A stretch of 64,000 bases of DNA. Origin: Pavona decussata (Eukaryota). Shown here in pieces: positions 21,254-44,176 of the stretch. Where the stretch lies: positions 124,001 to 188,000 of the forward strand of contig CDRNST010000221.1 of assembly GCA_977016875.1 (NCBI GenBank), read 5' to 3'. A model generated the notes under the pieces. That model saw only the letters and a program-made list of their open reading frames with translations. It did no database searches and was not told where the DNA came from. Within the stretch, counting starts at the first letter, position 1. Each line of letters starts with the position of its first letter. The translations under genes were made by a program, and so were the position numbers.

Positions 21254-21256
21254 TAC

Positions 21257-24687: not shown

Positions 24688-24973
24688 CTGTTGAGGAATG
24701 AAACCAAGAACTAAATCAGAACTCACTAATAACTCGCCTTCTTCCTACGAAGGGCCTATAGGGTTATGTGCTGCCCAGGAGCCGCTCCAATGGGATCATG
24801 ACAATGGGACGTTTGACCTGGAACGGTGAATCTATTTTCGAAGCACTTTCTGGCACGGGGCAGGATGAAATTCTTCAGGCGAAATGTGAGCAGCGATTAT
24901 AACTTATTTAGATCGAGATAAAAGCAGTGAGGAAATTAATTTTACGAAAAACACGACACTCCTGAGTTTTACA

Positions 24974-25018
24974 ACAGACATGTTTCGGCAGTTGCCTCAT
25001 GAGTGCCATCTTCAGTGT
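24974..25018 (-). ncRNA. Minimal type I hammerhead ribozyme motif (Penelope-associated)
   Basis: Minus strand ACA-CTGAAGA-T-GGCA(ctcatgaggcaac)TGCC-GAAAC-AT-GTC-TGT. Confidence 0.75.
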
Positions 25019-26360
25019 GAAATGAACAACAAATTACAGTGGAATATAAATGCTAAAAAAATTACAATAATAATAGAAATAATTAAGACCATAACAATAG
25101 TAATACAAAATTAAACAGAAAGTTCTAAATTAACGTGTATGACTTGTGCGTTGAGTGTAGGTTTTTCCCAAACTATGTGCAACGCCTCTTTGATTTTAAG
25201 GGCAAACCGCGTGGATGCCTGATCGATGATGGCAAAATTGTCGCGGGAGCATGCAGAGCGACATGCTGACGAAGTCTCCAGATGCTTGAAAATGTGTGAG
25301 GCCCCGTCCGTTTCCAAGTGTTCCCTTACACGTGTGTTGAAATGTCTGGTGGTCTCACCGACATAGCAAGCTGCACAGCCTGCGCACGAAAATTTATAAA
25401 CCACACATGATCAGAGTCCATTGGGGATAGGGTCTTTCACACTAGAGAGACTACCTACTTTGAAAGAGGAAAACGCTAACACTACGTTTGCATTATTACA
25501 ATAGAAATGTGAAAGTCGACTAGAACATTCCGCAAGAAAACATTCACCGGCTTATTAACATGTTTTTCTAGTTTTACCTCATTTTCATACAAAATTGGGC
25601 TAGTCAAGACACTTGTTGACAGAACTCTCAAGATTTGTAACACCTGGCAAGCGTTTATTGAGGACATCGCGTCACTAACATTCATCCTAAAGAAAAACAT
25701 GTATCCTCCCAGGCTAATAGAAAGAATCATTAACCGCAGTGTCACTCAGTATGTAACAGGCAACTATGTAAGATCAACTCGTGAACAAGCGCCTAATACC
25801 TTTTATTTCAAATTACCATACATAGGTTATATTTCTAGCATCGCTCAAAAGGGCATTCGTCGACTTTCACATTTCTATTGTAATAATGCAAATATAGTGT
25901 TGGCGTTTTCCTCTTTCAAAGTAGGTAGCATCTTTAGTGTGAAAGACCCTATCCCCAATGAACTCCGATCATGTGTGGTTTACAAATTTTCGTGCGCAGG
26001 CTGTGCAGCTTGCTATGTCAGTGAGACCACCAGACATTTCAACACACGTGTATGGGAACACTTGGAAACGGACAGGGTCTCACACATCTTCAAGCATCTG
26101 GAGACTTCGTCAGCATGTCGCTCTGCATGCTCCCGCGACAATTTTGCCATCATCGATCAGGCATCCACGCGGTTTGCCCTTAAAATCAAAGAGGCGTTGC
26201 ACATAGTTTGGGAAAAACCTACACTCAACGCACAAGTCATACACGTTAATTTAGAACTTTCTGTTTAATTTTGTATTACTTTTGTTATGGTCTTAATTAT
26301 TTCTATTATTATTGTAATTTTTTTAGCATTTTTATTCCACTGTAATTTGTTGTTCATTTC

Positions 26361-26400
26361 ACACTGAAGATGGCAGAGGCAACTGCCGAAACATGTCTGT
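26361..26400 (+). ncRNA. Minimal type I hammerhead ribozyme motif (Penelope-associated)
   Basis: ACA-CTGAAGA-T-GGCAG(aggcaa)CTGCC-GAAAC-AT-GTC-TGT; CUGAnGA and GAAA core, palindromic ACATGT stem III, GUC site at 26395-26397. Confidence 0.78.
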
Positions 26401-26597
26401 TGTAAAACTCAGGAGTGTCGTGTTTTTCTTAAAATTAACTTATTTAGAGCAGTTACTTGCTACACCTCATGTGCTACATGTTTAAACTAATTACTTATAT
26501 TATTGTTGGCGAGCGTTAGGAAGGCAGCACACTGTTCTCAACAATAGCGGAGAAAATCCAAAATTTGTCGGATGTTTCATATTGTATTGTCAGTGTA

Positions 26598-29500
26598 AGT
26601 TAAGAAGACAGAAAACGAACTGGTGTGCGCGCGGATAGAGCGTGCTCACCAATAGAGACATTTGAATTATCGTAAGCATTTAAGCGGCCTTCACACGGCA
26701 AACTAAAGTTGGCAAACTTGTGTTGGCAAACTCAAGTTGGTGTGTGTGAACGGCAAAAAAAACAGTCGGCAAGTTGATAAACTGTTGGCGCCAAATAGAA
26801 CTTGCCTCTATTCTTGCCAACTTTTTCACCAACTTTTTCGTGTTGGTAAACTCGTATTTGACGTGTGAACGGTTGGTAAACGTGTGTTCGTGACTGTCAA
26901 CCAATCAAAACACGCGCTCTTTTCACGTGATTTGCGTGGCACTTCACAAAATGGTGGACGGACGTGTAGACGAACGTGCAACTTTTCGATTAATCGAGGA
27001 AGTTCAAAACTGTCCAGATCTTTGGGACGTTTCGTCTGCAGCGCATAAAGACACAAAAAACAAGCAGAAGAAAATGGAAGAACTAGCGGAGAAACTGGGG
27101 TTAAAAGGCGGTAAGTAAAGGATGGGATTTCTACTGATATAAGGTTTCGTCCAAAACTTTCTATTTTTCCAGCGCTTTCTGTTTCTTCTTCGGCGAATAA
27201 CATACAATAGGACCAAGACACAAGCGGCAACTCTTCGTGAGTGCCACTGCTCTGCGACGGTTTTGTTGCAAATTTAGCGCGTGTTGTGATTTGACGCGAG
27301 TTTGACGTGTGAAGGCACGAGTTTGCCAACTTTTTGAAGTTCGCCAACACGAGTTTGCCAACTTAAGCTTGCCGTGTGAAGGCCGCTTAAGAGTTTCGTA
27401 AGTTACGCGTACGATTGTCGCATGTGCGAGATGTTTTTTTTTTTTTTGGAGGGGGGGGGGGGGGGGGTTTATTTTGGTAAAGTTTAGTACCAACCGCGTT
27501 ACCGTTTTTGAGGTTTTTTTTTTGTTGCCGGTTACCCTACCGTTTTTTTTAGAAGAGTTTTGCGCAACCGCTTGCGAATATTTTCTGGCGACCACGACGG
27601 GAGAAAGGTGTAAACTGGTGTTTGTTTTGAGGTCTCGTTTGTGAAATGAGTTTCGAGTTGTGCGTTATGGCATCAGATACCGACTATACGAATTTACCGA
27701 GAAAACGAGGAAACTAAACTGAGTGGAGTCGACAAAAGGAAGGAAATGGACATTCTGTTGATACAGATAAAGAGTCGAAAACGTACCACAAAAACGAAAA
27801 TTTCGAAACTGCCACACGAGCTGGAAAGACTGCGTAAAGGAATCCGAAGTAACCATCATCGAAAGTGCGATTGAGCAGCTGTGGGCAGCCCAAGAAAATG
27901 CACAGGAAATTTTAGAGGAACTGTCCGCATTCTATTTCGAAGTGGGAGACGATTCTGGGAAAAACGAAGCTTTTGAAGAGTCCGAAACAATCGCAAAAAA
28001 AGTACAAAAAGCGATTGAAGCAGGACAAGATGCAATAAAAGTCCGCGCGGCCAAAACTGTGAACATAAGTAGGTCTTCAAGCGAGAACACGATGGATCGC
28101 TCCGAGCAGCCAGTCGGACAATATCAGCTAAATGAAAGTCATGGCAATCATGACGACCGAAACCGATTGTTGAAGCCGTTAAAGATTCCTACGTTCAATG
28201 GTGACAAACGAAAGTTTGAAGATTTCTGGGCCCTCTTCAGAAGTCTATCAGACGAGTCAACCGAGCCACCGATCTGAAAATGGCAAGGCTGCGACAATGC
28301 CTCACAGGGAACGCCTTGGAAGCCATTCGCGGTATCGGAGTCACTGCTCCCGAATACGAGGAGGCCAAAGAGATATTAAAAACGAAGTATGGTGGTGAGC
28401 GACGGCTTCTGCGAGCCTACATGGATCAACTAGAAGAGATGCCATTCATTAGAAGTAACGATATTCAGACCCTGGAGAGGTTTGCTGACCTTGTTAGAAT
28501 TACGTTGGTAAAATTACGGGCGGAAGGAAGAGACGGAGAGCTAGAAGATGGAACCCTTCATAGCTTGCTGTTAAAGAAGTTGCCTGAATGAACGTCAGGT
28601 AGAGAATTACAGCCGCTGGTTAAACGAACGCGCCAGAGAAAAATCAGTGGTAGCTGTCAGAGGCTGGCTTAAAGACGAGGTCAGATCCCTAGTTCCTAAT
28701 CAAAGCGGCGGAAATGGTGAACGGGAATGAATCGAAACCAGTCGAGTACGCAAGACCTCCTACAGCATCAAAGTACCAGGATCAGAGCAGGATACGAAAT
28801 TTTCATACCGCTACGACGAGAAATAAGCCAAGGATCACGAAGCCTCCCTCTTCCCTCTGTAGTAGTCTCGATCACGGTTTGTGGTTTTATAAGCAGTTCT
28901 ATGAAAAAGGGGTAGACCGTTGGCAGATTGCTAAAGAAAGAAATCTGTGTTTTCGTTGCCTTGCCTCTGATCATAGGGGAAAGACTGTAGAAAGGCCCGC
29001 ATATGTGGAATCGAATCATCACCGCCTTCTTCCTTGAAGTGAAGTGTTGGCAGAAACCGGACCGATGACTACGTTACCCAATGTTGCCGGACTATGGGAG
29101 AGGCCAAGTTGTTCCACGGGAGGGGGCGCCCGCAGTGACTCTGACCAGCTGTTATGTCAAAACGCTCACTGAGTCTTATTCGTTACGAACTGTCCCTGTG
29201 TAGATGAAGGCTAATGGTAGAAAATTAAAGATAAACGCTATTCTAGACGACGCATCGAACGAAACTTTCTTAAACGATTGAGTTGCTGGGGTACTTAGAC
29301 TGCAAGAACCTTTTCAGAAAGTTCACGTTTATGTTATCAACGATACAGTGGAAACCTTTCAGCCCATGCCGTTAAAGATTAAAGCAGAAACTGTCGATGG
29401 GAGGTTTTCAAAAGAAATCAGCGTAAAAACGTGCCTGCAGACAGTGACAGGCAATTACAGAGTCGTGAACCGGATCGAACATCAGAATAAACGGCCTCAC

Positions 29501-30116
29501 CTGATCCTGTGCAGTTTTACCAAGCCAGCAAACGATGGAGTTGTCGATCTTTTGATTGGAATTGATCACTGTGTTTGCGGGGAGGAGACCCTACTTAATT
29601 CCCATCCGTTGACTTATCAGAGTTCAGACCCGCGAGACGATGTTCCATTGACCCCTAACCATTTCGTGCATTGCCAAATAGCAGGACAGTTCCCCCTGAT
29701 TCTGTTAAAACCACTACTTTTCACCCGCGTCAAAGATGGCGAAAGGTTCAGGACATTATTTCACGAGTGTGGAGGGGATGGCTCAAAAAATGTGTTCCTG
29801 CCCTCAACAGCCGACCAAAGTGCACTTTAGAAATCCGAGACCCAAAAGTTGGGAATGTAGTTCTTGTGATGCAGCCCGATACTCCAAGAGGACGTTGGCC
29901 ATTAGGGCGAATTGTTGAAGTATATCCCGGACGTGATAGCCACACCCGTGTGGCTAAAGTTGCGTGTGGAATAAAGACTGTCGTTAGACCAATTAACAAA
30001 ACTGATTCCTCTTGGAATCAATTGCTAATTAGTTATTTAAAAATACACCAGGACTACCTCCCAGTGTTGGGAGGGGGAATGTTAAGAAGACAAAAAAACG
30101 AACTGGCGTGCGCGCA
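26598..30116 (+). mobile_element. Degenerate, internally deleted BEL/Pao LTR retrotransposon
   Basis: LTR start gttaagaagaca..aacgaactgg.gtgcgcgc at 26598 and 30080; PBS-like TGGCATCAG at 27668; PPT gggagggggaa before 30080; gag (LKIPTFNGD..F..FW..F, LRQCLTGNA, CFRCL..DH), protease (INAILDDAS), integrase C-terminus (LNS.PL..LTPNHF; RWRKVQ..WPLGRIVEVYPG); many stops and frameshifts. Confidence 0.88.
26684..27386. mobile_element. Non-autonomous PIF/Harbinger deletion derivative inserted in the BEL 5' LTR
   Basis: TIRs gcggccttcacacggcaa..gttggcaaact / agtttgccaac..ttgccgtgtgaaggccgc flanked by TTAA; MADF-like ORF start (LIEEVQNCPDLWD..HKD..K, +, 26951-27110) and transposase-like N-terminus (RRRRNRKRW..FWTKPYI, -). 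Confidence 0.8.
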
Positions 30117-31399
30117 GCACAAAAAAAGTATATATAAATAAATTTTAAAAATCGGACAGATGTTATAAAGTTGTCACTAACGAGATTACTTTCGCGGCAA
30201 ATGACCTCACCCGCGAGCTTTCGTTGTACAGTGATTGAATAGAGTCATGTCTTATCGTTTTACTTTCGAATATCTCGTATTTTGATCCGAAGGTTATTTC
30301 GTTGATTCGGCGCCATACGTTCTGTGGTTGTCGCCTGAATTTTACTTGCTTTCCCTTGCTGATCGAAAACAGTTTTAAAGCTGCCGTATCTACCATACCG
30401 GTCTTGTGTTAGAAAATGTGACTGTAACGAGATCGGTTTCCTGCGTATTTCTTTCCATTGCAGTTGACTCCAGGGGAGCTGATGTTTTATTGGTTCGCGG
30501 TATCGTGGGGTGAGAAAATCTACTGGGGAGGTGTGAGGTGTTAGCGCGTTCGCGAATCATGTTTTAAAGAATTTGTCGGTTTTGAAGGGTGATGGGTAAT
30601 TGAAAAATCTTAAATATCTCTGCTGCGGCACCGTTTTATGTAATGCGTCCCTCCACTTTTTAGCTCCACGGACTTTACACTTGGATAGCTAAGTAACCAA
30701 TCAGCTTCACACCGTTCTGTTGATTGATCCTCTGCCATTGATAAGAAACAGTTGTTTGGATTCAGCGCCCGCGTTCGATATCCGATACGTTGACTTCATG
30801 TGAATGATGCACGGTAGTTTCACCTTCTGAGGGCTACCGGCACTTTCGAAGCAAACAAATTCCCCAAATTATATTTTCCAAATTCTACAAATATTAAGCT
30901 TTGTATTGATGTCTAGGTTGCTATCGTTTACTTAAAGGTCACGCGGCTACGAATTTTATGCCGACGGATACCACGCGAAGGTCGGTCATAACATAAAATT
31001 AAATGGGGCTAAGTAATCTCGTTAAGTAATAGACCTTATTCGCTCTATATGCTAGATGTCCATCACAAAGCACGTGATATTCTCAGGAAAATCGATCCTT
31101 TGTCTTTTTGGAAGTAAAAAAAAAATGCATGCCATGGGTTTCCGTTTTCACACCTTCACATTACTTTCTTCCTAATTTCTGTTCTTTGTGTTCAATTAAT
31201 ATGAGGAGATAAAGAAACTTGAAACTTGAACTTGAAAATGTGACCGATTCTAAAAGTGACTACTCCCTAGAGTACGGTCTTGTGATTTGTAATGGGGCAA
31301 GAAAACAACGGAGCGAATGAGGCCTATTAAAAGTAATAGTGAGTGAAAAATCAGAACTGCTGGTATCATGCACTACGTACAAAATCTGTTAATACACAC

Positions 31400-31510
31400 C
31401 TGAAACCGAGCAAGAGTTTCACTATGCAGTTTCTCTGTTCCATAACTGTTCTCGTCGTAAAGAAATTTAATCTGACTCGCTCCTGCATCTTCCGCATTTT
31501 GGACGAGCTC
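31400..31510 (-). CDS. SACS: Sacsin-like gene 1 exon (ELVQNAEDA ATPase motif I); absent from the ORF track
   Basis: ttttag|GAG CTC GTC CAA AAT GCG GAA GAT GCA ... TTT CAG|gtgtgt; [37 protein letters not shown]; 111 nt, phase 0-0. Confidence 0.92.
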
Positions 31511-31798
31511 CTAAAACAACACATGCATTTAGTTGCGTCAAATTGAACTACACAGAAGCAGTTTCTCGTGGAACTGTTTTTATGACATCGCTGCGGTATG
31601 TGTTAAAAGGCACGCTTACAAAGATTTTAAATTTTCCCGTTTGATCTTCCATTTAAATGAACATCCTGCAACTTCTTAGACTATCTCACTTTCTTGCACG
31701 TCACGGAAAACAAACATAAAGTTATATGACGTCTGATAAGTAATCAAGAAGTAATTTCCACATCACATGGCATCATTCCTTCATGGCTCTGACTTTAA

Positions 31799-32412
31799 AG
31801 AGGCAGTGTCACCTATTTTACTGTCACTTTGATTGGCCAAAAAACATATTTGAATCCGTGGAATCGTTAAAACAATGGTTCAGTTTTATTAATTTTAGGG
31901 AGCTTAAGCAACGACGACGGCAACGGCAACGAAAACGTCACCTGAAAATATATCTTTATTTCATTTGTGTTACTTCGAGATTATTTCAACTCGCTCAACT
32001 TTTACAAAACTGGCGAACTATCCAGGAACCAAATTGGTAGGAGTGGCGTACAAGTTAAGAAAGAAAATGAAAATCTAACTGTCGTGCGTTCACGTTCTCC
32101 ACAAAACCGTAAATGTGGTCACTTCACGTTGTTGCTTTGCAGAGGACGACACAGAAATCTACCAAAATGTAAAACGCACGTGCAGAGCGATTGATTTTGT
32201 TCATTAAACCTATTGTTTTGCGGCGTTGTAGTTGCCGTCGCCGTCGTCGTTGCTTAAGCTCCCTAATATCCCTACAAGTACAAAGAACCTAGTATTAATT
32301 TTGTTTGGCTGCAGATGGCTAGGATGGAAATGGATTGCAACCAATGTTTTCAAGACTTTTCGTCTAATATTTGAAGCAGTTTTGACCAAAATACAGCCGT
32401 GAAAGTGCCCCT
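31799..32412. mobile_element. Degenerate TTAA-flanked MITE hosting a nested element
   Basis: Imperfect TIRs ttaa-agaggcagtgtcac / gtgaaagtgcccct-tcaa. Confidence 0.45.
31898..32263. mobile_element. MITE with TA target duplication
   Basis: TA-gggagcttaagcaacgacgacggc ... gccgtcgtcgttgcttaagctccc-TA. Confidence 0.88.
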
Positions 32413-32416
32413 TCAA

Positions 32417-32940
32417 CCCTATCTAGACTGCGGGGTTGAGGAGGGGGGAGGAGAGGGTGGGGGTTGTTCCCGCGGCGACTTTCAACTCTGAATAACGTTT
32501 TTTAATATTTGAGCAAACGCCACGCCCTGAGACTTCATGACTTTGTTCAGAACTTTATCTGCGAAAAATTTGGTGTGGTCGGTTAATATTGATTGACTTC
32601 AATGTTACCATGGCAACAAATGTTTGACAGGCAGCTTTTTCAGAAAATAGCGTTATTGGTTTTCATTGCTCTCTGTCCAATTTTGGCGCTTTCCTGAGGT
32701 TTGAGAAAATCCAGAAATCCAAGATGGCGGCCACTTGGCAATCATGACCTAATTACCACTTGATATGACGTTGTCTCTTCGCGTTGCGGACCTAAAAGGA
32801 GACAAATTTGGACGTACTACCTATTCTCCAAGTCTCATTGTCATACCCTTTATACTTGCGAAGTTATGGAGGGAGGAATTCGCCCCCTCCCCCCGGCCCC
32901 AAGAGACCAAAAAAAGGGGGAAAAACCGGTCTAGATAGGG
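32417..32940. mobile_element. piggyBac-like MITE
   Basis: TIRs ccctatctagac / gtctagataggg; flanks tcaa and ttaa. Confidence 0.75.
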
Positions 32941-33456
32941 TTAAGGTAAAGATTTTTTTTATACAATAGACCCTTGCTTTTTAATTGCTATAGCTTCGTT
33001 TCAAACGTTGTGGACTTTGCCTTCTGTTTTCCTTTTTGTGTTTTTTATTTGCCATGAACTTGTTTTTGTTAGAACAGACAATCCATGAATTGTCAGAAGG
33101 CTATTTTTTTAATAATTTAACATTTTCTGTCAAAACAAGAGCAAGTTTATTTGGACAATTTCTCATTTAAAGAATATCAGCTGATTGCCTTGTGGCAGAA
33201 AACATTCAAAAAGTGGTTATTGCTAAATTATATTCAATACACCTTTTATAAAATAGATATCAGGTATGTACTTTATCTTATTTTTTGTGTCATTTATTTT
33301 TGGTTTACTTTCACTTTCTTTAAAATTGCTTTCCTTAACATCAATTACGACCTTAACAATATTAATCATTAAAAACAACAACAACAAAAGTAAAGACTAC
33401 CAAACACAACTAAAATCTCCCACAACTGAAAGAAGTATCGTAAGGCAAGGATCTAC

Positions 33457-33569
33457 CTTTAGTATCTGCCCATCATCTGGGTACTGATCTAGGATTTGCT
33501 TCAACTGCTTTATGAGTGATGGCTGAATAAAATCAAACTCTTCATCATCGCTGTCTAGTTCTGGATCCA
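33457..33569 (-). CDS. SACS: Sacsin-like gene 1 first main coding exon
   Basis: tttgtag|TG GAT CCA ... CTA AAG|gtagat; (M)DPELDSDDEEFDFIQPSLIKQLKQILDQYPDDGQILK, the typical start of a sacsin repeat. Confidence 0.9.
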
Positions 33570-34973: not shown

Positions 34974-35094
34974 CTTGTGGCTAAAAACGTATCCCTCATA
35001 TATATTGCAAAATTAAAGGTCTTATTAATAAATGTACAGCATGTAGTCACATGGCTCACCCTTGCATCATAAGGAAAAATTAATTTTTACTCAC

Positions 35095-35142
35095 TCGTAA
35101 TCACCGGAAGCCAGAGTCCTTAAACTGTTCGGTAATCATGAC
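35095..35142 (-). other. 48-nt 5'UTR exon of gene 1 with a 12-codon uORF; supplies the A of the split ATG
   Basis: Polypyrimidine tract tctttctttccctgctag|G and donor TTACGA|gtgagt; A + TG from the next exon gives ACG ATG G. Confidence 0.65.
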
Positions 35143-35591
35143 CTAGCAGGGAAAGAAAGAAATTTACGATGTTAGGTATGATATATTCAGCCATTTATTC
35201 TATGTGACAACTAATCTATTCTAATCTATTTTCCAAATAGTTGGCCTCGACACAGCAATTTTAATTGAGGCTTCGAGAGTAAATATTTTGGAAAAATGAA
35301 TTGAACGTTTCCTGAACTAAGAAAGCCGTGTCTAAGGCGATAGAGTGTCGTGTACAGGTCCTGAAAGTTCAGTCCTGGGCATGGTTAATCGGCTGTGATC
35401 GTGGACGCGACTCGTTCTTGATCGTGCATACCATTAAATAAGTCCACAACATGACTCTAACTTTTGGCAAAGGAAAAGGATCTTTGAATTTTAATTCCTT
35501 CAGCATTTTCTGAACAAGAGTTAAAGCCAGCAATCCCAGCCGGTGAATCATGAAGGAGTGAATGGCATTAGCCGACGAACAGAGCTACCAA

Positions 35592-36240
35592 AAATGAGGT
35601 GTGCGCATATAGCGGAATCTATATTTCAGGAAGTGATTATGTTCACTCTTGACCGATTTTGTTTTCCAATTTCCATCACCATTTAAAGAACATCTCAAGT
35701 CGGCCGTAAACATACACCTTGCAAAATCTCTTATCCCTCATCGCAATATCTGCGAAGAATAAAACGCAATTCTTAATTTCTCGAAACCGTTATAGCAACG
35801 AAGAAACCGTGAGAGGTGTTCGTTGCTGGGCATGTTTCCAAATTTTGATACACCGACGTTATTCATCCACTTTTGTCGCGAAATTAACATTTCCACGAAG
35901 CGCTAGCAGCTGAAATTATGACTGAATGGCCGAAGCTCTCGAATCAAGGCAATAAATGACTTAACTGACTTACCCAAAACCTTCACATGCAATAACTCTT
36001 CGTCTGTTGTTAGTCAAAACAAGCTTGCCGGTGTTTCTCGGAATTTCACTGCAATTTTTAAAGCTTCCTTTTTCCCGGAATCGACAGGTGAAAAAACCGT
36101 GGAAGTCACGTGAATAGATTTCTCGGAATAATACACGCCTCACATCCAGTGTAAAGGTAGAAATTTAAGGGGAAACGTTCATGTTAAATTGAAATCTTTG
36201 ACGGAGTCTTAATGTGTATTTTAAGCCTTTTTTACGATTA
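35592..36240 (-). promoter_or_regulatory. Promoter/first-exon module copy 1 (three GAS-type sites, E-box, donor)
   Basis: TTCTCGGAA 36035-36043, TTCCCGGAA 36072-36080, GTCACGTGA 36105-36113, TTCTCGGAA 36120-36128; minus-strand GTAAGT donor at 35973-35968. Confidence 0.65.
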
Positions 36241-36276
36241 ATGTATTTCTGTTGTTGAAGACGGACGAGATGCTAG

Positions 36277-36871
36277 AAATGAGGCGTGCGCATATAGCAG
36301 AATCTATATTTCAGGAAGTGATTATGTTCACTCTTGACCGATTTTGTTTTCCAATTTCCATCACCATTAAAAGAACATCTCAAGTCGGCCGCAAACATAC
36401 ACCTTGCAAAATATCTTATCCCTCATCGCAATAGCTGCGAAGAGTAGAACGCAGTTATAGTTATCAATTTTTGGAAACCGTTATAGTGACGAAGATACTG
36501 TGGGAGGTGTTCGTTGCTGGGCAAGTTTCCAAGTTTTAATACAACAGCATTATTCATCCACTTTTGTTGCGAAAAATTTCCACGGAGCGCTAGCAGCTGG
36601 AATTTTGACTAAATGGCCGAAACTCTCGAATCAAGGCAATAAATGACTGAACTGACTTACCCAAAGCCTTCACATGCAAGAACTATTCGTCTGTCGTTAG
36701 TCAACACAAGCTTGCCGGTGTTTCTCAGAATTTTACGGCAATTTAATAAGCTTCCTTTTCCCGAAATCGACAGGTGAACAAACTGTGGAAGTCACGTGAA
36801 TGGATTTCTCGGAATACTACACTCACATCTGATGTAAAGGTAGAAATTTAAGGGGAAAAGATTTATATTAA
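36277..36871 (-). promoter_or_regulatory. Promoter/first-exon module copy 2 (recent tandem duplicate of copy 1)
   Basis: High similarity to 35592-36190; TTCTCAGAA 36722-36730, GTCACGTGA 36791-36799, TTCTCGGAA 36806-36814; GTAAGT donor at 36660-36655. Confidence 0.65.
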
Positions 36872-37274
36872 GGCGGGGGTAAACGTGAAATTTGAAGAGG
36901 TTTTAAGAAGGGTTAGAAGAAAGAAAATGATTTTTGGAACACCAACAGAAAGTTGATACCCACGCAAGAGCACCAAAGGTTGCTAGTGGACTAACTTGGT
37001 GTCTGTCTATTAATTATTAACTAAAAATTCTTATTTTAAAACTTCACTAAATCTTGAATATTTCTAATTTCTCTTTATTTTTAGTTACCAATCCTTCTTG
37101 AAAAACTATCTCCTCCCAAATGTACCAAAAAGTCACCCAAAAATTCACAAACAACCCCACAACATATATTCACGGGATGAGCAGAGAGGTTTTGGATTGC
37201 TTGAAACATGAACGAGATATTTTCATTAAAGCCATGTCAAGTGCGGTAAAATGGCGTTTAGGTTTACCCCCGCC
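36872..37274. mobile_element. TTAA-flanked non-autonomous DNA transposon (Kolobok-like termini)
   Basis: TIR ggcgggggtaaac / gtttacccccgcc with TTAA on both sides; empty site (gttaaattgaaatc) visible in module copy 1. Confidence 0.8.
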
Positions 37275-37315
37275 TTAAATTGAAATCTTTTAAGGCTTTT
37301 TTTTCTTACGATTAA

Positions 37316-37580
37316 AGCCCGCCGCACACGTGAGGAAAGAGCTGAGCAAAATGCCTCGCGAGGCAGTAGTTCAGCCATTTCCTCTCGTGTGCGGTGAAGT
37401 TTTGGTAAGAATTTCGCCTCGCGAGGCGAAATCTCAAATATCCAACATGTTTGATACTTGAGATTTCGCCTCGCGAGGCGAAATTCTCACCAAAACTTCA
37501 CCGCACACGAGAGGAAACGGCTCAGCTATCTGCCTCGCGAGGTATTTTGCTCAGCTCTTTCCTCACGTGTGCGGCGGGCT
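37316..37580. mobile_element. Fully palindromic Tourist/Harbinger-like MITE
   Basis: TAA-agcccgccgcacacgtgaggaaagagctgagc ... gctcagctctttcctcacgtgtgcggcgggct-TAA; whole element folds back; four gcctcgcgagg units. Confidence 0.9.
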
Positions 37581-39269
37581 TAACGCATTCACCTGCATAC
37601 TTTATTCGAACCGCATTCATCTAACTTTAGGATGAAATCTTTTAAAATGATTAATAATTTTTTGTAGAATATCTTTGCCAATAGCTTTGAAGGCGAGGCT
37701 AACAAAGCTTTTCATTTAAAAAACTAGTTTTGTCTGGATATGAATGAAAACTTATTTTCAAAAAAAAAAAAAAGTATTTATTACCTGGCTTTCATAATGA
37801 GGTTCAAAGCAACTCGGAAATGGTCCATTAAGGCAAAACTATTCAGTGTAATCAAACGCTTCGTCACATGTCCCGCATTTCCGTTCTACATTTTCTCATT
37901 CAGTTATTACCCTCTCCTAGTAGCTCCATGTATCAAAAAATTCTTGCTATCTTTTACGACAGGACTGATAAATGATTTTACTTTGTCTTATTTGCAACCG
38001 CTAAATGACTTACCACATTACAACTATCAACATGGAAAAGAAGTAGATTACACTAACTCGACCTAACTCTTTGTTTTCTGATGAAAATTCAGCAGGCTAC
38101 AGTTTTCTTGGAATTTTTCCGATGCTTTCGTGGAAAAGTGCAGGCAGCTGAATAAACACTACCAAATTTCTTCTAATTGAACTTTCTCCAGCGTATGCAA
38201 AAAAAAAACAACAACTATTCTTTCCTCCCACCTCGCAAAACACAGACTTGGAAAACGAAATAATGACATAACATCTCCTTGTCCTATTCTAGGACACAGG
38301 TTGCATATTCAGTTTTGTTAATATCCGTGATAGAAAAGTCTCTTTTCACGGTAACATTCCGCCATATTGAAATTTGACTACTGAGTAAACCGCACGAAAT
38401 GCCGGGTTTGTGTGATGGGGAATTCATTCGTTAACTTTTATTTATTGTGGTATAATTTACATTGTATTGCAAAACCTGTGAAAGCCATAAAATTTTAATT
38501 AAACACAGCAGAACAAAGAGTTTTGACAGTTTTCTGTTACATTTGGAGGAATGTAGCCGTGTGAGAAAGTGATTAATTTGAGGGGTATAGTTGGGCCGTC
38601 GTGCTTTTAAGCTTTATAATTTATTTATCTTTGTTAGTCAACCGTTAACTTTAACAGGGTATCGCAGACCATGCACAGAATAATGAAATAAGCCGCGATT
38701 ACACGATCTCCTGCCAAACCACATCGGCCGGGTCCACATCCCTAGAATTATTACACACACGCTCAGAAGGCATTCATCGCAATTAGAGTTTCTTTGATGC
38801 CTTGTGCTTTCGGAGTGATAAAATACCGTATTGTATATGCAATTAAAGGCCAGCTAGGTTGTTTTGCAAGAGATTTTATGCTCAGGACTTCAAACAGAGA
38901 GCTGTCTTAGGCTTAGCCAACACAAAGAGTCCTTAAAAGGGCCGTAAAATAATCTAGGTACACAGAAATCTCTTTTCTATACAACTAGCTATTTTTTTCC
39001 TTGAGTACAGTGCCCTTAAATGGCGGGCGAATGATAACTGGTAAACTCACGACGGTCGCTTCCGAAAGCGGACGAACCGTGTTTCCCAATCTATTGTGCT
39101 CTAATAAATGTGGCGTGTTGCAAACAGTAAGAATTAGAACAAAAAAAAATTGAAATTAAGGTTACACACACAGTTTTCAAAGCTTTGCGAATAAATCTGT
39201 TGTGAATGGGCAACGCTGCAGGAAGTACCAATGAATTTATAGCTGATTTGGACTACTTGAAACTGAGTG

Positions 39270-39465
39270 CATTAAGATTAGTAAACTTGCCAAGTATAAA
39301 GGTGATATGTCCGGAAGCGAGCGAAGATATAGTTCTGCAAAGTCGCCAAATTTTACAGACGTTTGTACCATACAAGCGTCTGTAAAATCTCGTGACTTTG
39401 CGGATGCATGCCCTCATTAGTTTTAAACATATCATTCTCAAACTTAGCAAACTTACTAATTTTAA
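39270..39465. repeat. Degenerate inverted repeat (old MITE core)
   Basis: ttaagattagtaaacttgccaagt..gatatgt versus acatatc..aacttagcaaacttactaattttaa. Confidence 0.4.
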
Positions 39466-40079
39466 AGCGTCCTTTCCAGCGGTGTCGGTGGATTTTTGCT
39501 AACTGGTCCAAGTCAAAAGTTTAAAAAACCATGGAAGGTTCTATTAATTTGAACATTTCCCGAAGAAAGCCGTATCTAACGGCGATGTTAAAATAAGGCA
39601 ACGTTGCAGAAATAAAATGTCATGATAATTATACCACCGAACCAACTGGTGTTAGAAAATAGAATGATAAATGTCCCCAAGATTTTGGAGATTGGCAGAT
39701 AAAACTTTCTCACATTCACACAGAGAAATTGTAACTAAGAAATAACTTTAAAAGTTTGGAATAGTGAACGACGCATTCAGGTTGTACCCTTTGTCCTTAT
39801 CCTGATTCGATGGAAGAAACATTTTAAGGTGACTTCATACATTTCGCGCATCCGGACATTATCATGACCAAATCACCGACGTTCGTATCTTCTAACAAAT
39901 TACCTTGAACGATGTCAATTCAGTTGACTGACCAGATCCCCGACAGCCAAACGCAAGATATACTTGTTTCTTTTATACTTAAAGCAGTATGTTTACACTT
40001 GCAGAAGTTTTAAGCTAAATGGCACGTAAAATGCCAGTGTATTTCATGTTACTCAGTTAGTAACCATGCCACCTAGTAA

Positions 40080-41316
40080 GGCCCGGTTCAGACGCCGAAC
40101 TTTTCATGAGCCGAACCTAATACCTTGAATAAAGTACATGAAAAGTTCGGCGTCTGGATCAGTTGAGAACGGCTGTTTCAATTTGGAACGGCTCAGCCGT
40201 TCTTCCCGCCTTCAGGGCCTCTTCATATGATCCCGGTTACCGGGATGGCTCGGTAAGCGGGATGAATTTTGCAGTCCGTTCATATGGGAAATTTCATCCC
40301 GGTTACCGAGATGAAAAGTGGTGACGCGGTCAATCGAGCGTGACATTTACCGAACAAGCCCGGCAAGAATTTTTCATTTTTATCGGTTCTACAAACCTCA
40401 AAAGTATTATATCTTTATCTCTACCACGAAAAGGAACTGAATTATTTTGAACTAAAACATCTCAGAAATGAGCCGTAATAATCAAATATATGCGTTCTAA
40501 GACGCGAATGTTTGGTTATAGAGGGCCTCTTCATATGATCCCGGTTGACCGGGCTAGCCCGCTTACCGAGATCTCGCCTCATTCCTATTTCTTTTGTAAG
40601 AAATTCGATGTGTTCATATGAGAAGGCGGGCCAGCCCGGTTACCGAGATCTCGGTTTCAGCGACCGAGATCTCGGGAGTCCGGGACGAAAAATTTCTCAT
40701 ATGAACACGGTATCCCGGTTACCGGGATGAAGTCTATAACCAAACATTCGCGTCTTAGAACGGATATATTTGATTATTACGGCTCATTTCTGAGATGTTC
40801 TAGTTCAAAATAATTCCTTTTCGTAGTAGAGATAAAGATATTATACTTTTGAGGTTTGTAGAACTGATAAAAATGAAAAATTCTTACCGGGCTTGTTCGG
40901 TAAATGTCACGCTCGATTGACCGCGTCACCACTTTTCATCTCGGTAACCGGGATGAAATTTCCCATATGAACAGACTGCAAAATTCATCCCGTTTACCGA
41001 GCCATCCCGGTAACCGGGATCATATGAAGAGGCCCTCAGCCGGGAATTTCGGCTTTGGAACGGCTTTGATTCAGACGCCGAACCTTTTATGAGCCGAAGC
41101 TAATGCATAAATTATTATAACATATTTCAAAGGAAAAAAGGAAAAAATAAAAAAAAAATAAAAACCGCTGACATTTCGATCGGTTTTGCTTCAAGTAAAT
41201 TAAGTTCGGCTAATTAAGTTCAGCGTCTGAATCAAAAGGAAGGATTTTCGTGATTTGCGCCGACCATAATTTCAATTAAATTCGGCTCATAAAAAGTTCG
41301 GCGTCTGAACTGGGCC
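40080..41316. mobile_element. Harbinger-like MITE (TAA target duplication) with nested insertion
   Basis: TAA-ggcccggttcagacgccgaactttt.atgagccgaa ... ttcggctcataaaaagttcggcgtctgaactgggcc-TAA. Confidence 0.88.
40215..41035. mobile_element. Nested foldback element with ~300 bp inverted arms and TCA target duplication
   Basis: TCA-gggcctcttcatatgatcccggttacc ... catatgaagaggccc-TCA; arms 40215-40522 and 40733-41035; a third terminus copy at 40523. Confidence 0.88.
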
Positions 41317-41809
41317 TAACCGGACATAACTGAAACCTCAAACCTCGATTTCACTGATATGATATCCCTGCTGTAGTGGACCTTGAAGATTGGCCCATGA
41401 TCAGGCAATGGTGAATCAAATTCTATTATTAAATAAGGACACAGCGCAAAAAGTAACTTTTAGATATAGAAAAGGATCCTGTAAACTCGAGCTCACCTGC
41501 TCGACAGACCGGTAAACTATGACAACAATTTAAATCAACATGGCGGGCTTATTATAAGCGAGAAATCGTGTTTGAAAAATTCATCTTCGGTGTGTACACT
41601 AAAGGGAAATATATAAAAATGATCATTTTGTGGAAGTAAGTATTTTTGCTATGGGTTTTTTTTATATTTTGAACGAGTCCTAATGTTCGAATCGCGGGTT
41701 CATTAACACAGCTTTGAAATCGGCCGTAAAAATCACTCCATAAACACACAGCCGGCATGGTTTACTACTAGTTATATCCCTTATTGCGCGGTTATAAAGA
41801 ACTTACAAT

Positions 41810-42265
41810 TAATTTCTCGGAATTATTTAATCAACGAAGAGACCGTAGTAGATGTTCGTTGGTTCGCACTACAATTACCGCAGTAAGCGTAACCGGCATT
41901 TCTCACGCAATTTTGCCGCTGCCTGCGAAAAACATTTGAACGAACCGTTGAGCAGTTGATTATCTCGAATAAAGACCAATAAAAGCAACAAATAACTCAC
42001 CAAAAACTTCACAGACAAGAAAATTTCCCCCTGATGTAAGTCAACGAAAATTTGCAGTTCCTTCTAGAACCTTCAAGGTAAAGTTCTTCCAGTGATTTCC
42101 CGGAATCGTTAGCTGAACAAACCGTAGACGTCACGTGATCAGGTTTCTCGGAATATCGACGCACCTCATCGCACATCCGGTGTTATCTGCATATCGAAAA
42201 CCTTACAATGGAGGTTTAAAAGGTTGAGCCGAAAAGATTTATATTCAATTAAAAACTTTCACGTC
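41810..42265 (-). promoter_or_regulatory. Promoter/first-exon module copy 3 (older, diverged paralogue)
   Basis: TTCTCGGAA 41814-41822, GTGAGT donor at 42000-41995, TTCCCGGAA 42097-42105, GTCACGTGA 42130-42138, TTCTCGGAA 42145-42153; motif order and spacing match copy 1. Confidence 0.6.
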
Positions 42266-44176
42266 TTTTTTCTCAGGATTTTCGTACTTCTCTTAGAAAA
42301 ATTGTTTGAAGTTGGAAAGCTACGTAACACAGCTAGATATAAATAAATACGCTAGATCATATGCACAACAATCTTTAAAACCTTATCGCAAAATGCGAAG
42401 ACATTAAATAATTCACGCAAAATAAAAGTACTTACTATAAGAAGATTGCTTGTTTTGCAATCGAAAATTTGTGTTTCCCTAAAAGAGAAGGGACTAGAAC
42501 GTTTCGGTCGCAAAATCTTATCGGGGTTATATTGGCTGGAAAGCCGGATATACTATTATGTTATGCAATATTTCATGGCAGCTTAGATTATTTTTTGACA
42601 AATTCCAAGTATGAAGTAAATGGCAAAATTTTCTGGTGAATAGGTTTTAAAGAAACTGTGGTGCTGTGTAGTTAGGGAGTGAAAACGAATGTTTAGTTTT
42701 ATCAGCGAAGTTGGAAAGGTAATTTGGCAACCATAAAGAGATTTGAATGCTAACGTTTCCAGCGTTAAACCTAAACGGTCTTAAACCTTATCGCCTCTTT
42801 TGATAAAACCAAACATTCGAACAACAACTTTATTTCACATTTCCTTGCATTTTCAAACTGTTTTATATTAAAACTTTCCATATTGAGAATATACAATTAA
42901 CATTTTACACTGAATATACGTTTTATATAAGGATATGCCTAGCAGCTAGATAACCGCAAATGAGGTTTTCGAGCTAGTAGAGCGCATGCGTAATTTGTTT
43001 GTTTTTGTGTACGTGGGACACCGGCTTATTCAACGCTTGAAACTGATCCATTTGAGTGTATGTAAATGCTCCAGAACTGTTGACCCTTTGTTATCTTAAT
43101 TTAATAGACTTTAATAGATTTGATGCCTGAGTGATTTTTCCTGTTTCGTTATCTGCATTTGAAAGCACTTCACTGCAGGTGATGGTAAGACAATAAAGCA
43201 CTAAAAAATAAACTTTACAATTTCATGCTGTCCTGTGTTGTTAAAAAAATAGCAATGCGGAAATTTTTCAGGTCAAAAACATTTCAATTTTCAGGTGCCG
43301 GGTGTTAGCTCAGTTCGCTTTCAGCAAACATGGTGAAGCAAACCTCTGTATGAAATTTTTCTGTTGTTCAGTGTACTTGCTGTCTTCGGAATAAGAGATA
43401 CTGCATACGGGAGTAAAGAAGTAACAAGCTACGTAGGTAGGTCAATTAAGAACATCAAGCATGCATTGTTACGGTCGCGTATGATCTGAAATGAGCGGTT
43501 GAGTCTAGAGCCCGGTGCTCTTTTCTAGGACTATTTCGAAATAAGGAGTACTTGAAAGATATAGCAATTAATTGTACTGTTTGCTGTTTGGAGCAATATT
43601 CCATACGCGTTTTCGTGATTACTACTCGTGATTAATATTCCTGCTCCCGAATGTAGAATGATAGCTTACCGATACATTGGTTCGGCTGAATAACACACAG
43701 CTTGAAATACCCCTTGTTTAAGTTTTATTTGGAGACTCAAAAATTAACGAAGAGCAAAAACACACGATTCAGTATCTTAACGTAACATAAACTTCTACAG
43801 ACTTTTGCAATGCTTTACTATGTGAGCGTATTCTAATTGTAAATAACTTAGATGTATGTACTATTTACTTAAATATTGTGACATGAGATATGTATTTTTT
43901 ATCTNNNNNNNNNNNNNNNNNNNNNNNNNNNNNNNNNNNNNNNNNNNNNNNNNNNNNNNNNNNNNNNNNNNNNNNNNNNNNNNNNNNNNNNNNNNNNNNN
44001 NNNNNNNNNNNNNNNNNNNNNNNNNNNNNNNNNNNNNNNNNNNNNNNNNNNNNNNNNNNNNNNNNNNNNNNNNNNNNNNNNNNNNNNNNNNNCCATTTCA
44101 TTAATTAATTAATACTCCCTGAAATAGCTAAGAATAAAAAAAATGCCAGGGAGCAGGATTAAATAAAATAAATTAA

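What the first reader, a model, noticed from the sequence alone, without database searches (positions are those of the whole stretch)
35592..42265. Triplicated promoter/first-exon cassette with conserved STAT (GAS) sites and E-box upstream of a giant sacsin
Seen in sequence: three paralogous modules (35592-36240, 36277-36871, ~41810-42265). Each carries a minus-strand splice donor (GTAAGT, GTAAGT, GTGAGT) and a fixed cluster of TTCCCGGAA, GTCACGTGA and TTCTCGGAA; the first site is mutated to TTCCCGAAA in copy 2. In the diverged copy 3 the flanks have drifted while the motifs and their spacing are retained, which acts as an internal phylogenetic footprint. Established: TTCnnnGAA is the STAT GAS element and GTCACGTGA is a USF/MiT-TFE type E-box. 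Inference: the gene has alternative STAT-responsive promoters and may behave like an interferon-stimulated gene in an invertebrate with no known interferon.
Basis: partly seen in the sequence, partly recalled or inferred. Interest (0 to 1): 0.8.

Follow-up and report, generated by a model that had tools for sequence, protein, structure and literature searches.

The report
Duplicated promoter and leader-exon array
Three copies of a short promoter plus non-coding first exon sit upstream of a giant coral sacsin-like gene and share a strongly conserved block of STAT-type and E-box motifs, which gives a testable but still unproven handle on how this stress- and immunity-linked gene family is switched on.

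Summary
Three paralogous modules lie at 35582-36266, 36267-36900 and about 41680-42300. Each has a minus-strand GTRAGT donor and the same TTCCGAGAA-N6-TCACGTGAC-N25-TTCCGGGAA block with identical spacing; copy 2 has one broken site.

The module is not a dispersed repeat. The 602-Mb genome holds seven BLAST matches, all on this contig, and three form a second array upstream of a neighbouring sacsin paralogue.

Across ten copies from this coral and a sister species, the E-box is the only 8-column window without a substitution. The TTCN3GAA sites change at about half the background rate. The 57-64-nt block is the most conserved stretch of the module.

Exon 1 lies in each module, followed by a 48-nt non-coding exon 2 (35142-35095) ending in A. 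Exon 3 starts with TG, so the ATG is split across the junction. A spliced transcript contig from another coral shows the homologous exon 1 end, exon 2 start and split ATG.

The same motif vocabulary recurs upstream of a third paralogue and of a sacsin-like gene in another coral, where little or no sequence similarity remains.

Binding by STAT or MiT/TFE, and interferon-like induction, are inference only. This is a well-supported promoter array of a known kind, of moderate interest.

The parts
35582..36266 (-). Module C1 (P-type, proximal): upstream part, motif block, TATA-like TTTAAAAA, exon 1, donor, and the duplicated part of intron 1
   Evidence: Tandem repeat families D1-D4; alignments
36267..36900 (-). 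Module C2 (P-type, tandem copy): GAS1 broken (TTTCGGGAA on the minus strand), GAS2 centre changed (TTCTGAGAA), intronic inverted repeat degraded, donor kept
41680..42300 (-). Module C3 (D-type, distal, no TATA-like box); homology with the gene B array extends over 41323-42622 at 91%
36072..36128 (-). C1 composite element on the minus strand: TTCCGAGAA (36128-36120) - N6 - TCACGTGAC (36113-36105) - N25 - TTCCGGGAA (36080-36072)
   Evidence: It lies within the most conserved 57-64-column window of the 10-copy alignment
36035..36043 (-). C1 fourth TTCN3GAA site (GAS2, TTCCGAGAA), just 3' of the TATA-like box and at about the inferred start site
36758..36814 (-). C2 composite element: GAS0 36806-36814 and E-box 36791-36799 intact; GAS1 36758-36766 mutated (TTCCCGAAA on the + strand)
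42097..42153 (-). C3 composite element: GAS0 42145-42153, E-box 42130-42138, GAS1 42097-42105
35974..36030 (-). Inferred non-coding exon 1 of C1. The 5' end is approximate, placed about 30 nt after the TATA-like box. The 3' end is GGTTTTGG, followed by donor GTAAGT at 35973-35968
   Evidence: Sequence. Donor kept in all 8 P- and D-type copies of the alignment. GGTTTTGG is found at the exon 1/exon 2 junction of transcript contig L044. The start site itself is inferred
36661..36717 (-). Inferred exon 1 of C2 (5' end approximate); donor GTAAGT at 36660-36655
42001..42060 (-). Inferred exon 1 of C3 (5' end approximate); donor GTGAGT at 42000-41995
35095..35142 (-). Common non-coding exon 2 (48 nt). 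Acceptor AG at 35144-35143, donor GTGAGT at 35094-35089, last base A. Contains a 12-codon upstream ORF at 35139-35101
   Evidence: Acceptor, donor, final A and upstream ORF are conserved in gene B's proximal copy and in the sister species. The first 12 nt match the L044 transcript 11 of 12
33457..33569 (-). Exon 3, the first coding exon. It starts with TG and completes the ATG with the final A of exon 2, giving M-DPELDSDDEEFDFIQPSLIKQLKQILDQYPDDGQILK
   Evidence: The same TG start occurs in paralogues B and F. The transcript-derived protein P0031 starts MEVDGEDEGFDLIQP
35796..35825 (-). Second conserved block, in intron 1 of C1: inverted repeat CAACGAA-N16-TTCGTTG, followed by a TTYCGAGAAATTAA site that is an intact TTCCGAGAA only in D-type copies (41814-41822 in C3)
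   Evidence: family D5; 0.63 changes per column against about 0.95 background
42062..42074 (-). In C3 the fourth site reads GAAGGTTCTAGAA, a perfect three-unit heat-shock element instead of TTCN3GAA
   Evidence: The sister species has TTCCTAGAA here. The element occurs at chance frequency in the window (2 observed, 1.9 expected)
8699..33569 (-). Coding body of the sacsin-like gene served by the modules: several exons including a 3682-codon exon at 8699-19747
   Evidence: Pfam SACS and HEPN; exon matches

Best explanation
The three modules are paralogous copies of one unit: a proximal promoter, a short non-coding first exon and its splice donor. The unit belongs to a giant sacsin-like gene of a stony coral. 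The copies most likely act as alternative first exons. Each would splice to a common 48-nt non-coding exon 2, which ends in A, and then to exon 3, which begins with TG and so completes the start codon. These splices are inferred for this gene and shown only for a homologue in another coral. The functional core of each unit is a block of about 57 nt, placed roughly 40-100 nt upstream of the inferred start site. The block is an E-box of the TCAYGTGA type flanked by palindromic TTCN3GAA sites, with a further TTCN3GAA at the start site. I infer that a bHLH-zipper factor binds the E-box. A MiT/TFE factor fits best, because the T and A flanks are kept even where CACGTG has become CATGTG in distant copies; USF is also possible. 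I infer that a dimeric factor reads TTCN3GAA, and STAT is the only known family with that specificity. My odds are about 0.75-0.8 for a promoter and leader-exon array, about 0.5 for a MiT/TFE or USF E-box in use, about 0.3 for STAT binding, and about 0.15 for interferon-like induction.
For: The module is confined to sacsin loci: 7 BLAST matches in 602 Mb, all on contig C221, in two arrays upstream of paralogues B and C. Donors GTAAGT or GTGAGT sit at the homologous column in all 8 P- and D-type copies, and the +3 base toggles only between A and G. Exon 2's acceptor, donor, final A and upstream ORF are conserved in gene B and the sister species, whereas a redundant distal copy has lost its acceptor and its upstream ATG. 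Exon 3 starts with TG in genes B, C and F. A spliced transcript contig (L044, Logan SRR22097827) reads ...GGTTTTGG-AT-GTCATGATCACC...CTGA|TGGAAGTT. That is the exon 1 end, the exon 2 start and the split ATG. Fitch parsimony on 10 copies gave 0 changes in the 8 E-box columns, the only such window of 480. The four TTCN3GAA sites changed at 0.44-0.56 per column, against about 0.95 for the remaining columns (binomial p=0.002). The least-changed 57- and 64-column windows cover the block. P-type and D-type consensus sequences are 51% identical overall, but the longest well-conserved stretches cover the block. A genome-wide search for TTCYSRGAA-TCAYRTGA-TTCYSRGAA found 5 places and none for the control pattern. 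Four of the five are upstream of sacsins on C221, including one near gene F that has no BLAST similarity to the modules. In another coral (L048) the region 8-9.5 kb upstream of the first coding exon has no BLAST similarity to the window, yet it carries 5 TTCYSRGAA sites (0.9 expected), TCAYGTGA boxes and an 18-nt near-match to C3's GAS1 flank. The genome has a MiT/TFE gene over the Pfam cut-off and colinear weak STAT_alpha and STAT_bind hits at one locus. CpG is not depleted over 35.5-43 kb (o/e 0.8-1.7), whereas the coding exons are depleted (0.69-0.71).
Against: There are no transcript, CAGE or chromatin data for this species, so start sites and the three exon 1 to exon 2 junctions are inferred. 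Several copies are visibly decaying: C2 has a broken GAS1, the B1-type has lost its donor in both species, and the sister species' proximal P copy is cut off after GAS1. Fewer than three promoters may therefore be live. The spacers inside the block are also conserved (0.68 changes per column), so the footprint does not single out the named motifs. Some excess of central over half-site changes in the TTCN3GAA sites can be explained by CpG decay. Pairs of TTCN3GAA-like sites are common genome-wide, 301 against 129 for the control, many in repeats. The STAT gene evidence is sub-threshold. In Nematostella, STAT knock-down did not alter 2'3'-cGAMP-induced gene expression (PMC8713801). Two A. millepora sacsin-like clusters moved in opposite directions after poly I:C, 3.2-fold up and to 0.075 (PMC3723955 additional file 2). 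No module was found upstream of the window's second sacsin, of the other paralogues whose upstream DNA was fetched, or in two other loci examined.
Confidence: 0.6

Rival explanations
1. The array is a promoter array, but the TTCN3GAA sites are not STAT sites. The TTCCGG and CGGAA cores could be ETS-type sites or sites for another factor. Together with a USF, MYC or MAX-type CACGTG box they would form an ordinary constitutive promoter with no immune or cytokine-like inducibility.
For: CCGGAA and CGGAA cores lie inside every TTCCGGGAA and TTCCGAGAA site. A further invariant GGATGTG (ETS-like) lies about 25 nt upstream of the block. The sacsin coding exons have CpG o/e of 0.69-0.71, which I read as a sign of gene-body methylation. 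TTCN3GAA pairs are common genome-wide. The anthozoan STAT knock-down had no effect on 2'3'-cGAMP-induced gene expression.
Against: Both half-sites, TTC and GAA, are kept, not just the ETS-like half. Five different central triplets (CGG, CGA, CGC, TGG, CAG) occur at GAS1 with the half-sites intact. Distant clusters switch CACGTG to CATGTG but keep the T and A flanks, which by established knowledge fits MiT/TFE rather than USF or MYC.
Confidence: 0.3
2. Only one module per gene is a live promoter. The other copies are decaying by-products of local duplication, or have become intronic or upstream enhancers that keep the motif block but no longer start transcripts.
For: C2 has a broken GAS1 and a degraded intronic repeat. 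B1-type copies lack the donor in both species. B2's downstream exon 2 copy has lost its acceptor and upstream ATG. The sister species' proximal P copy is truncated right after GAS1 yet keeps the block.
Against: C1 and C3, and likewise B3 and the sister species' D copies and its L043 P copy, keep GAS0, the E-box, GAS1 and a consensus donor. C3 and B3 are 91-94% identical and the D versus P split predates both the gene B/C duplication and the species split, yet both types keep the donor.
Confidence: 0.35
3. The distal (D-type) promoter is a heat-shock promoter driven by HSF through GAAGGTTCTAGAA. The TTCN3GAA sites would be degenerate heat-shock elements.
For: C3 and B3 carry a perfect nGAAnnTTCnnGAAn just upstream of exon 1. 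Coral sacsins are reported to be up-regulated by heat (10.1101/867754).
Against: The element occurs at chance frequency in the window (2 observed, 1.9 expected). The sister species has TTCCTAGAA at the same place and P-type copies have TTCCGAGAA, so 3-nt spacing appears ancestral. By established knowledge, HSF needs 2-nt spacing.
Confidence: 0.1
4. There is no regulatory function. The shared block reflects recent duplication or a short gene-conversion tract between copies, and the motifs are incidental.
For: Most copies are only 10-20% diverged, the comparisons are within one gene family, and conversion cannot be excluded.
Against: P and D types differ at fixed positions inside the block in both arrays and both species, so any conversion would have to be old. 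The same motif vocabulary recurs upstream of gene F and in L048, where little or no alignable sequence remains.
Confidence: 0.07
5. The module is a dispersed repeat or transposon fragment unrelated to sacsins.
For: None was found. MITE-like inverted repeats lie between C2 and C3 but outside the modules.
Against: There are 7 matches in the whole genome, all within two sacsin upstream regions on one contig. The exact motif pair has 5 hits, 4 of them in modules.
Confidence: 0.02

Closest known systems
Arrays of alternative promoters with non-coding first exons spliced to a common exon (my recollection of a known gene architecture, not checked here)
   Same: Repeated units of promoter, short leader exon and donor lie upstream of one shared acceptor. 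The protein is unchanged and only the leader and its regulation differ.
   Different: The units here are recent duplicates (69-93% identical) that carry the same motif block rather than distinct regulatory inputs. Use of each leader is not shown.
STAT-binding GAS element, TTCN3GAA (established knowledge; optimal Drosophila STAT92E and vertebrate STAT sites are TTCCCGGAA-like)
   Same: Perfect TTCCSGGAA and TTCYCGGAA palindromes, 3-4 per module. The half-sites are conserved while the central triplet varies.
   Different: No binding or induction data exist. Whether this coral has a JAK was not examined. The STAT gene evidence in this genome is sub-threshold.
CLEAR element and M-box bound by MiT/TFE factors (consensus GTCACGTGAC and TCATGTG; established knowledge)
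   Same: GTCACGTGA(A/C/T) matches 9 of 10 positions and the TCACGTGA core is invariant in all ten aligned copies. Distant clusters have TCATGTGA with the same T and A flanks. A MiT/TFE gene is present.
   Different: Each module has one box, not the multiple boxes I recall as typical of lysosomal genes. USF can bind the same core. No link between sacsin-like genes and the lysosome or autophagy programme is shown in corals.
Coral sacsin-like genes described in Acropora (10.1101/867754; PMC8626496)
   Same: The same protein family. Those papers report heat responsiveness and long-term balancing selection, and PMC8626496 cites a poly I:C effect on sacsin-like expression.
   Different: Neither paper yielded a promoter description: a search of PMC8626496 for 'promoter' found nothing, and only the sacsin passages of 10.1101/867754 were read. 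The present locus is a tandem cluster of at least six sacsin paralogues in another coral.

Membership tests
Alternative first-exon / promoter array | Each unit ends in a consensus 5' splice site at the homologous position | tested here: met
   GTAAGT or GTGAGT in all 8 P- and D-type copies of the alignment; lost only in the B1-type
Alternative first-exon / promoter array | A shared downstream acceptor and an exon compatible with the reading frame | tested here: met
   Acceptor at 35144-35143 with a polypyrimidine tract. Exon 2 ends in A and exon 3 starts with TG. Both are conserved in gene B and the sister species
Alternative first-exon / promoter array | Transcripts that join each first exon to the common exon | tested here: inconclusive
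   Only a homologous transcript from another coral (L044) shows an exon 1 end joined to an exon 2 start. No transcript of this gene was available
Alternative first-exon / promoter array | Mapped transcription start sites | not testable with these tools
   Needs CAGE or 5' RACE. Only a TATA-like box in P-type copies is visible
STAT GAS element | Palindrome TTCN3GAA | tested here: met
STAT GAS element | Constraint on the sites above background | tested here: met
   18 changes in 35 columns against 285 in 289, p=0.002. Weakened by CpG effects and by conserved spacers
STAT GAS element | A STAT gene in the genome | tested here: inconclusive
   Nothing at default thresholds. With a relaxed E-value, three colinear same-strand hits appear at C8:3616274-3620489 (18.6, 22.2 and 24.1 bits)
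STAT GAS element | STAT occupancy and stimulus-dependent activation | not testable with these tools
   Needs EMSA, DAP-seq or CUT&RUN, plus reporters
MiT/TFE CLEAR or M-box E-box | TCAYGTGA core with a 5' T and a 3' A flank | tested here: met
   All 10 aligned copies have it. Gene F clusters have TCATGTGAC and GTCACGTGAT, and L048 has GTCATGTGAT. One sister-species copy has TCACGTGT after a 22-nt deletion
MiT/TFE CLEAR or M-box E-box | Evolutionary invariance | tested here: met
   0 changes in 8 columns, the only such window of 480
MiT/TFE CLEAR or M-box E-box | A MiT/TFE gene in the genome | tested here: met
   PF15951 hits of 57.3 and 27.8 bits, colinear, at C93:4458686-4460140
MiT/TFE CLEAR or M-box E-box | Binding by TFE/MITF rather than USF, MYC or MAX | not testable with these tools
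   Needs a biochemical or genetic test
Dispersed repeat / transposon | Many copies scattered over the genome | tested here: not met
   7 matches, all on C221 upstream of two sacsins
Heat-shock element | Three or more alternating nGAAn units with 2-nt spacing, conserved | tested here: not met
   Present only in C3 and B3. The sister species and P-type copies have 3-nt spacing. It occurs at chance frequency in the window
Interferon-stimulated-gene-like behaviour | Induction by nucleic-acid or cyclic-dinucleotide stimuli through the promoter sites | not testable with these tools
   The literature is mixed: A. millepora sacsin-like clusters went 3.2-fold up and down to 0.075 after poly I:C

The most novel reading that the evidence does not exclude
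A composite STAT (TTCN3GAA) and MiT/TFE (TCAYGTGA) promoter grammar is the shared switch of one subfamily of the expanded, fast-diverging sacsin-like genes of stony corals. Sacsins are reported relatives of the bacterial anti-phage ATPase Tiamat. If the grammar is real, a STAT/TFE-driven stress and immune programme would exist in a cnidarian without interferon.
Probability: 0.15. Interest if true: 0.7.

Novelty: new member of a known kind. Interest (0 to 1): 0.4.

Why it matters
Sacsin-like genes are among the most discussed loci in coral stress genetics. They are reported as heat-induced and under long-term balancing selection (10.1101/867754), responsive to poly I:C (PMC3723955), and recently tied to a family of anti-phage ATPases (10.64898/2026.09.30.754977). 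I found no description of how they are regulated in the papers I read. This locus offers a compact, conserved 57-nt element, precise predicted junctions and candidate factor genes. The question of what turns coral sacsins on therefore becomes testable with isoform-specific RT-PCR, binding assays and reporters. It would not by itself change how we think about gene regulation.

Tried and rejected
- **Dispersed repeat or transposon:** rejected. The genome has 7 matches, all at two sacsin upstream regions.
- **Known RNA families:** Rfam at E<=0.1 over 34500-43000 gave only sub-threshold miRNA-like hits in MITE hairpins at 37404-37491, 39334-39404 and 40089-40158. None lies in a module.
- **Cassette upstream of the window's second sacsin (gene D):** its first coding exon lies at C221:215065-215163. 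About 13 kb upstream of it has no module by BLAST or motif scan.
- **Other paralogues:** the fetched upstream DNA of paralogues A and E and those on C18, C143 and C87 also has no module.
- **A third species (ERZ26692694):** I walked upstream in four look-ups. About 22 kb upstream of exon 3 consists of transposon- and virus-like genes with no module, so this is inconclusive rather than negative. The walk in the sister species through a 67-aa ORF landed on repeat copies elsewhere.
- **L050 (another coral):** no cluster upstream of its sacsin paralogue.
- **Genome-wide pairs of TTCN3GAA-like sites:** too common and often in repeats (301 against 129 for the control), so uninformative.
- **STAT Pfam searches at default thresholds:** negative, because the domains are split by introns.
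- **Heat-shock element:** at chance frequency and not conserved.
- **Spliced model:** The comparison with the transcript contig was made exon by exon.

Full report
**Where the window lies**

The window is G000:C221:124001-188000 of a 602-Mb assembly. The large minus-strand ORFs are sacsin-like: SACS domain E=3e-156, plus HEPN. The closest named relatives are sacsin-like proteins of the stony corals Porites, Oculina and Montipora, at 47-49% identity. I therefore take the organism to be a scleractinian coral. Contig C221 carries at least six sacsin paralogues, and five or six more lie on other contigs. The gene downstream of the finding, here called gene C, has its giant exon at 8699-19747.

**Check of the observation**

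- C1 (35582-36266) and C2 (36267-36900) are a tandem duplication with a 685-691 nt period. They are 85-93% identical by segment and 88% by BLAST.
- C3 (about 41680-42300) aligns with them at 69-76% in blocks.
- The donors, the three motifs, their identical spacing and the mutated first site of copy 2 are all as stated.

**Not a dispersed repeat**

A whole-genome DNA search with C1 found seven matches, all on C221. Three are the window's modules. The other four lie at 81.6-87.0 kb. Aligned, those four form three modules, B1, B2 and B3, upstream of the paralogue at 68-79 kb, here called gene B. The exact pair TTCCGAGAA-N(4-12)-TCACGTGAC occurs five times in the genome, four of them in modules, and the reversed control pattern never occurs.

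The gene B and gene C regions are colinear duplicates that include an upstream EGF/ZP gene. The modules fall into three types:
- P-type (C1, C2, B2), with a TATA-like box;
- D-type (C3, B3), without one;
- B1-type, a donor-less hybrid.

**Copies from other corals**

ORFs that happen to overlap the module or the first coding exon had been called as genes in public assemblies. I used them to reach other species. The sister species (ENA ERZ26692669; introns about 79-91% identical to the window) has modules of all three types on the same contig as its gene C orthologue. Directly upstream of that orthologue the order is:
- a B1-like copy;
- a D copy;
- a full P copy, with a 22-nt deletion between its two E-boxes;
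- a P copy cut off right after the block;
- exon 2;
- exon 3.

The array therefore keeps being rearranged, while the block survives in every piece.

**Footprint**

I aligned ten copies (six from this genome, four from the sister species) and counted Fitch parsimony changes per column.

| Feature | Changes per column |
|---|---|
| E-box, 8 columns | 0.00 |
| Four TTCN3GAA sites | 0.44-0.56 |
| Spacer between E-box and GAS1 | 0.68 |
| Exon 1 | 1.0 |
| Remaining columns | about 0.95 |

- The E-box is the only zero-change 8-column window of 480.
- The TTCN3GAA sites differ from the remaining columns at p=0.002.
- The least-changed 57- and 64-column windows cover the block from GAS0 to GAS1.
- P-type and D-type consensus sequences are 51% identical overall, but the longest well-conserved stretches cover this block.

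At GAS1, five different central triplets occur with intact half-sites, against two independent half-site breaks. That fits TTCN3GAA recognition, but part of it can be CpG decay.

A second conserved block lies in intron 1. It is the inverted repeat CAACGAA-N16-TTCGTTG followed by a further TTYCGAGAA site. I have no explanation for it.

**Gene model**

- Exon 2 is 35142-35095: acceptor AG with a long pyrimidine tract, donor GTGAGT. All three frames are closed, so it is non-coding.
- Exon 2 ends in A and exon 3 (33569-33457) begins with TG, giving ACG-ATG-G and the N-terminus MDPELDSDDEEFDFIQP....
- The same TG start is found in genes B and F. Four other paralogues start this exon with CG and must begin translation further upstream.
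- Exon 2's acceptor, donor, final A and a 12-codon upstream ORF are conserved in gene B's proximal copy and in the sister species. A redundant distal copy in gene B has lost both the acceptor and the upstream ATG.

**Transcript evidence**

P0031 is a full-length 4429-aa sacsin-like protein from a 13,950-nt Logan contig (SRR22097827). The contig is spliced: segments that are contiguous in it are separated by introns in the genomes. Its coding sequence is only about 70% identical to genes B and C.

Its 84-nt leader nevertheless reads ...CAGTGGTTTTGG-AT-GTCATGATCACC...GTCCTGA|TGGAAGTTGAT.
- GGTTTTGG is the last 8 nt of exon 1 in C1.
- GTCATGATYACC is the first 12 nt of exon 2, matching 11 of 12.
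- The ATG is split in the same way.

By my rough estimate, finding both short matches at the right places by chance has a probability of about 1e-7. This shows the leader architecture in a homologue, not in this gene. I compared exon by exon and did not build or search a joined model.

**The same vocabulary without alignable sequence**

A genome-wide search for TTCYSRGAA-N(4-30)-TCAYRTGA-N(10-40)-TTCYSRGAA found five places and none for the control pattern. They are C1, C3, B3, one on C331, and C221:320582, about 11 kb upstream of gene F's first coding exon. A second such cluster lies 540 nt away from the gene F site. That 10-kb locus holds 4 sites against 0.45 expected and has no BLAST similarity to the modules.

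In another coral (L048, ENA ERZ25067889), the upstream region shows no BLAST similarity to the window. Even so, the stretch 7.9-9.5 kb upstream of the first coding exon carries:
- five TTCYSRGAA sites, against 0.9 expected;
- TCAYGTGA boxes, 10 matches against 1.5 expected;
- ATTCCGAGAAATCACTGG, which differs by one base from C3's ATTCCGGGAAATCACTGG.

In these distant clusters CACGTG is sometimes CATGTG, but the flanking T and A are kept. By established knowledge that is the MiT/TFE signature rather than the USF or MYC one.

**Candidate factors**

A MiT/TFE gene is present: PF15951 hits of 57.3 and 27.8 bits at C93:4458686-4460140. STAT families gave nothing at default thresholds. With a relaxed E-value, the best STAT_alpha hit and the two best STAT_bind hits are colinear on one strand within 4.2 kb at C8:3616274-3620489. 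I read that as a probable intron-split STAT gene. Nematostella has a single STAT, and knocking it down did not change 2'3'-cGAMP-induced gene expression (PMC8713801).

**Literature context**

- Coral sacsin is reported as heat-induced and under long-term balancing selection (10.1101/867754).
- After poly I:C in A. millepora, one sacsin-like cluster rose 3.2-fold and another fell to 0.075 (PMC3723955 additional file 2).
- Sacsin groups with the anti-phage ATPase Tiamat (10.64898/2026.09.30.754977).

**Verdict**

The modules are a duplicated array of promoter plus leader exon, specific to one subfamily of coral sacsin-like genes. Their conserved core is a composite of an E-box and TTCN3GAA sites. 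That much is well supported. Which copies fire, which proteins bind and what stimulus acts are all inferred.

The STAT and interferon-like reading is possible but has no direct support, and what bears on it is indirect or against it. I file the finding as a new member of a known kind, of moderate interest.

Noticed in passing
window 35139-35101 (minus strand): Exon 2 carries a 12-codon upstream ORF (MITEQFKDSGFR*). Its ATG, length and stop position are kept in gene B's proximal copy and in the sister species. The uATG context GTCATGATYACC is the best-conserved part of exon 2 and is also present in the L044 transcript. This suggests translational control of the leader.
   Followed up: partly
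window 35095 / 33569: The start codon is split across an intron: A at the end of exon 2 and TG at the start of exon 3. Paralogues B and F share this. Paralogues D and E and those on C18 and C143 start the homologous exon with CG.
   Followed up: yes
window 42062-42074; L009:2916-2928 region: In C3 and B3 two substitutions turn the fourth TTCN3GAA site into a perfect three-unit heat-shock element, GAAGGTTCTAGAA. The sister species has TTCCTAGAA at the same place.
   Followed up: partly
window 35796-35825, 36487-36516 region, 41830-41860 region: A conserved intronic inverted repeat, CAACGAA-N16-TTCGTTG (9-bp arms in P-type copies), is about as conserved as the promoter block. Its function is unknown.
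   Followed up: partly
window 8699-24718 versus 37583-53646, compared with C221:64-94 kb: Between the gene B and gene C duplicates, the sacsin coding exons are mostly 69-81% identical, whereas most aligned segments of the upstream non-coding DNA and the neighbouring EGF/ZP gene are 78-93% identical. Either the coding sequence is diverging fast or the upstream part was homogenised later.
   Followed up: no
window 37315-37581 and 40076-41320: Long, near-perfect inverted repeats (up to 223-nt arms, 97% complementary) lie between C2 and C3. They look like MITE-type insertions and account for the sub-threshold miRNA-like Rfam hits. The corresponding interval is much shorter in the sister species.
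   Followed up: partly
window 25100-30150 (+ strand): Fragments of a retroelement (DUF1759 gag-like, DUF5641 integrase-associated) sit inside an intron of the sacsin gene.
   Followed up: partly
window 45802-51461 (+ strand): An EGF plus ZP-N/ZP-C gene lies between the two sacsins on the opposite strand. A copy also lies upstream of gene B. Its 5' end is unknown, so sharing of the C3 region as a divergent promoter cannot be excluded.
   Followed up: partly
window about 43.9-44.1 kb: A run of N (assembly gap or masked stretch), left as it is.
   Followed up: no
L010:1313-1360 (C221:105313-105360): An isolated pair, TTCCCGGAA-N30-TTCCGAGAA followed by CAGGTG, lies between genes B and C. No module similarity or obvious gene is nearby.
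   Followed up: no
L042, L045, L046, L047 (ENA ERZ26692694 ctg14618): In a third coral, more than 20 kb between the first coding exon and the next exon, and upstream of the first coding exon, is filled with integrase/chromodomain retroelement genes and virus-like genes (Pox_A32 ATPase, VLTF3-like, Bro-N, VRR-NUC). It looks like a Polinton-like or endogenous viral insertion. Observed only.
   Followed up: no
G000:C8:3616274-3620489 and G000:C93:4458686-4460140: Candidate STAT gene (three weak colinear hits) and a MiT/TFE gene (two hits over the cut-off) in this genome.
   Followed up: partly
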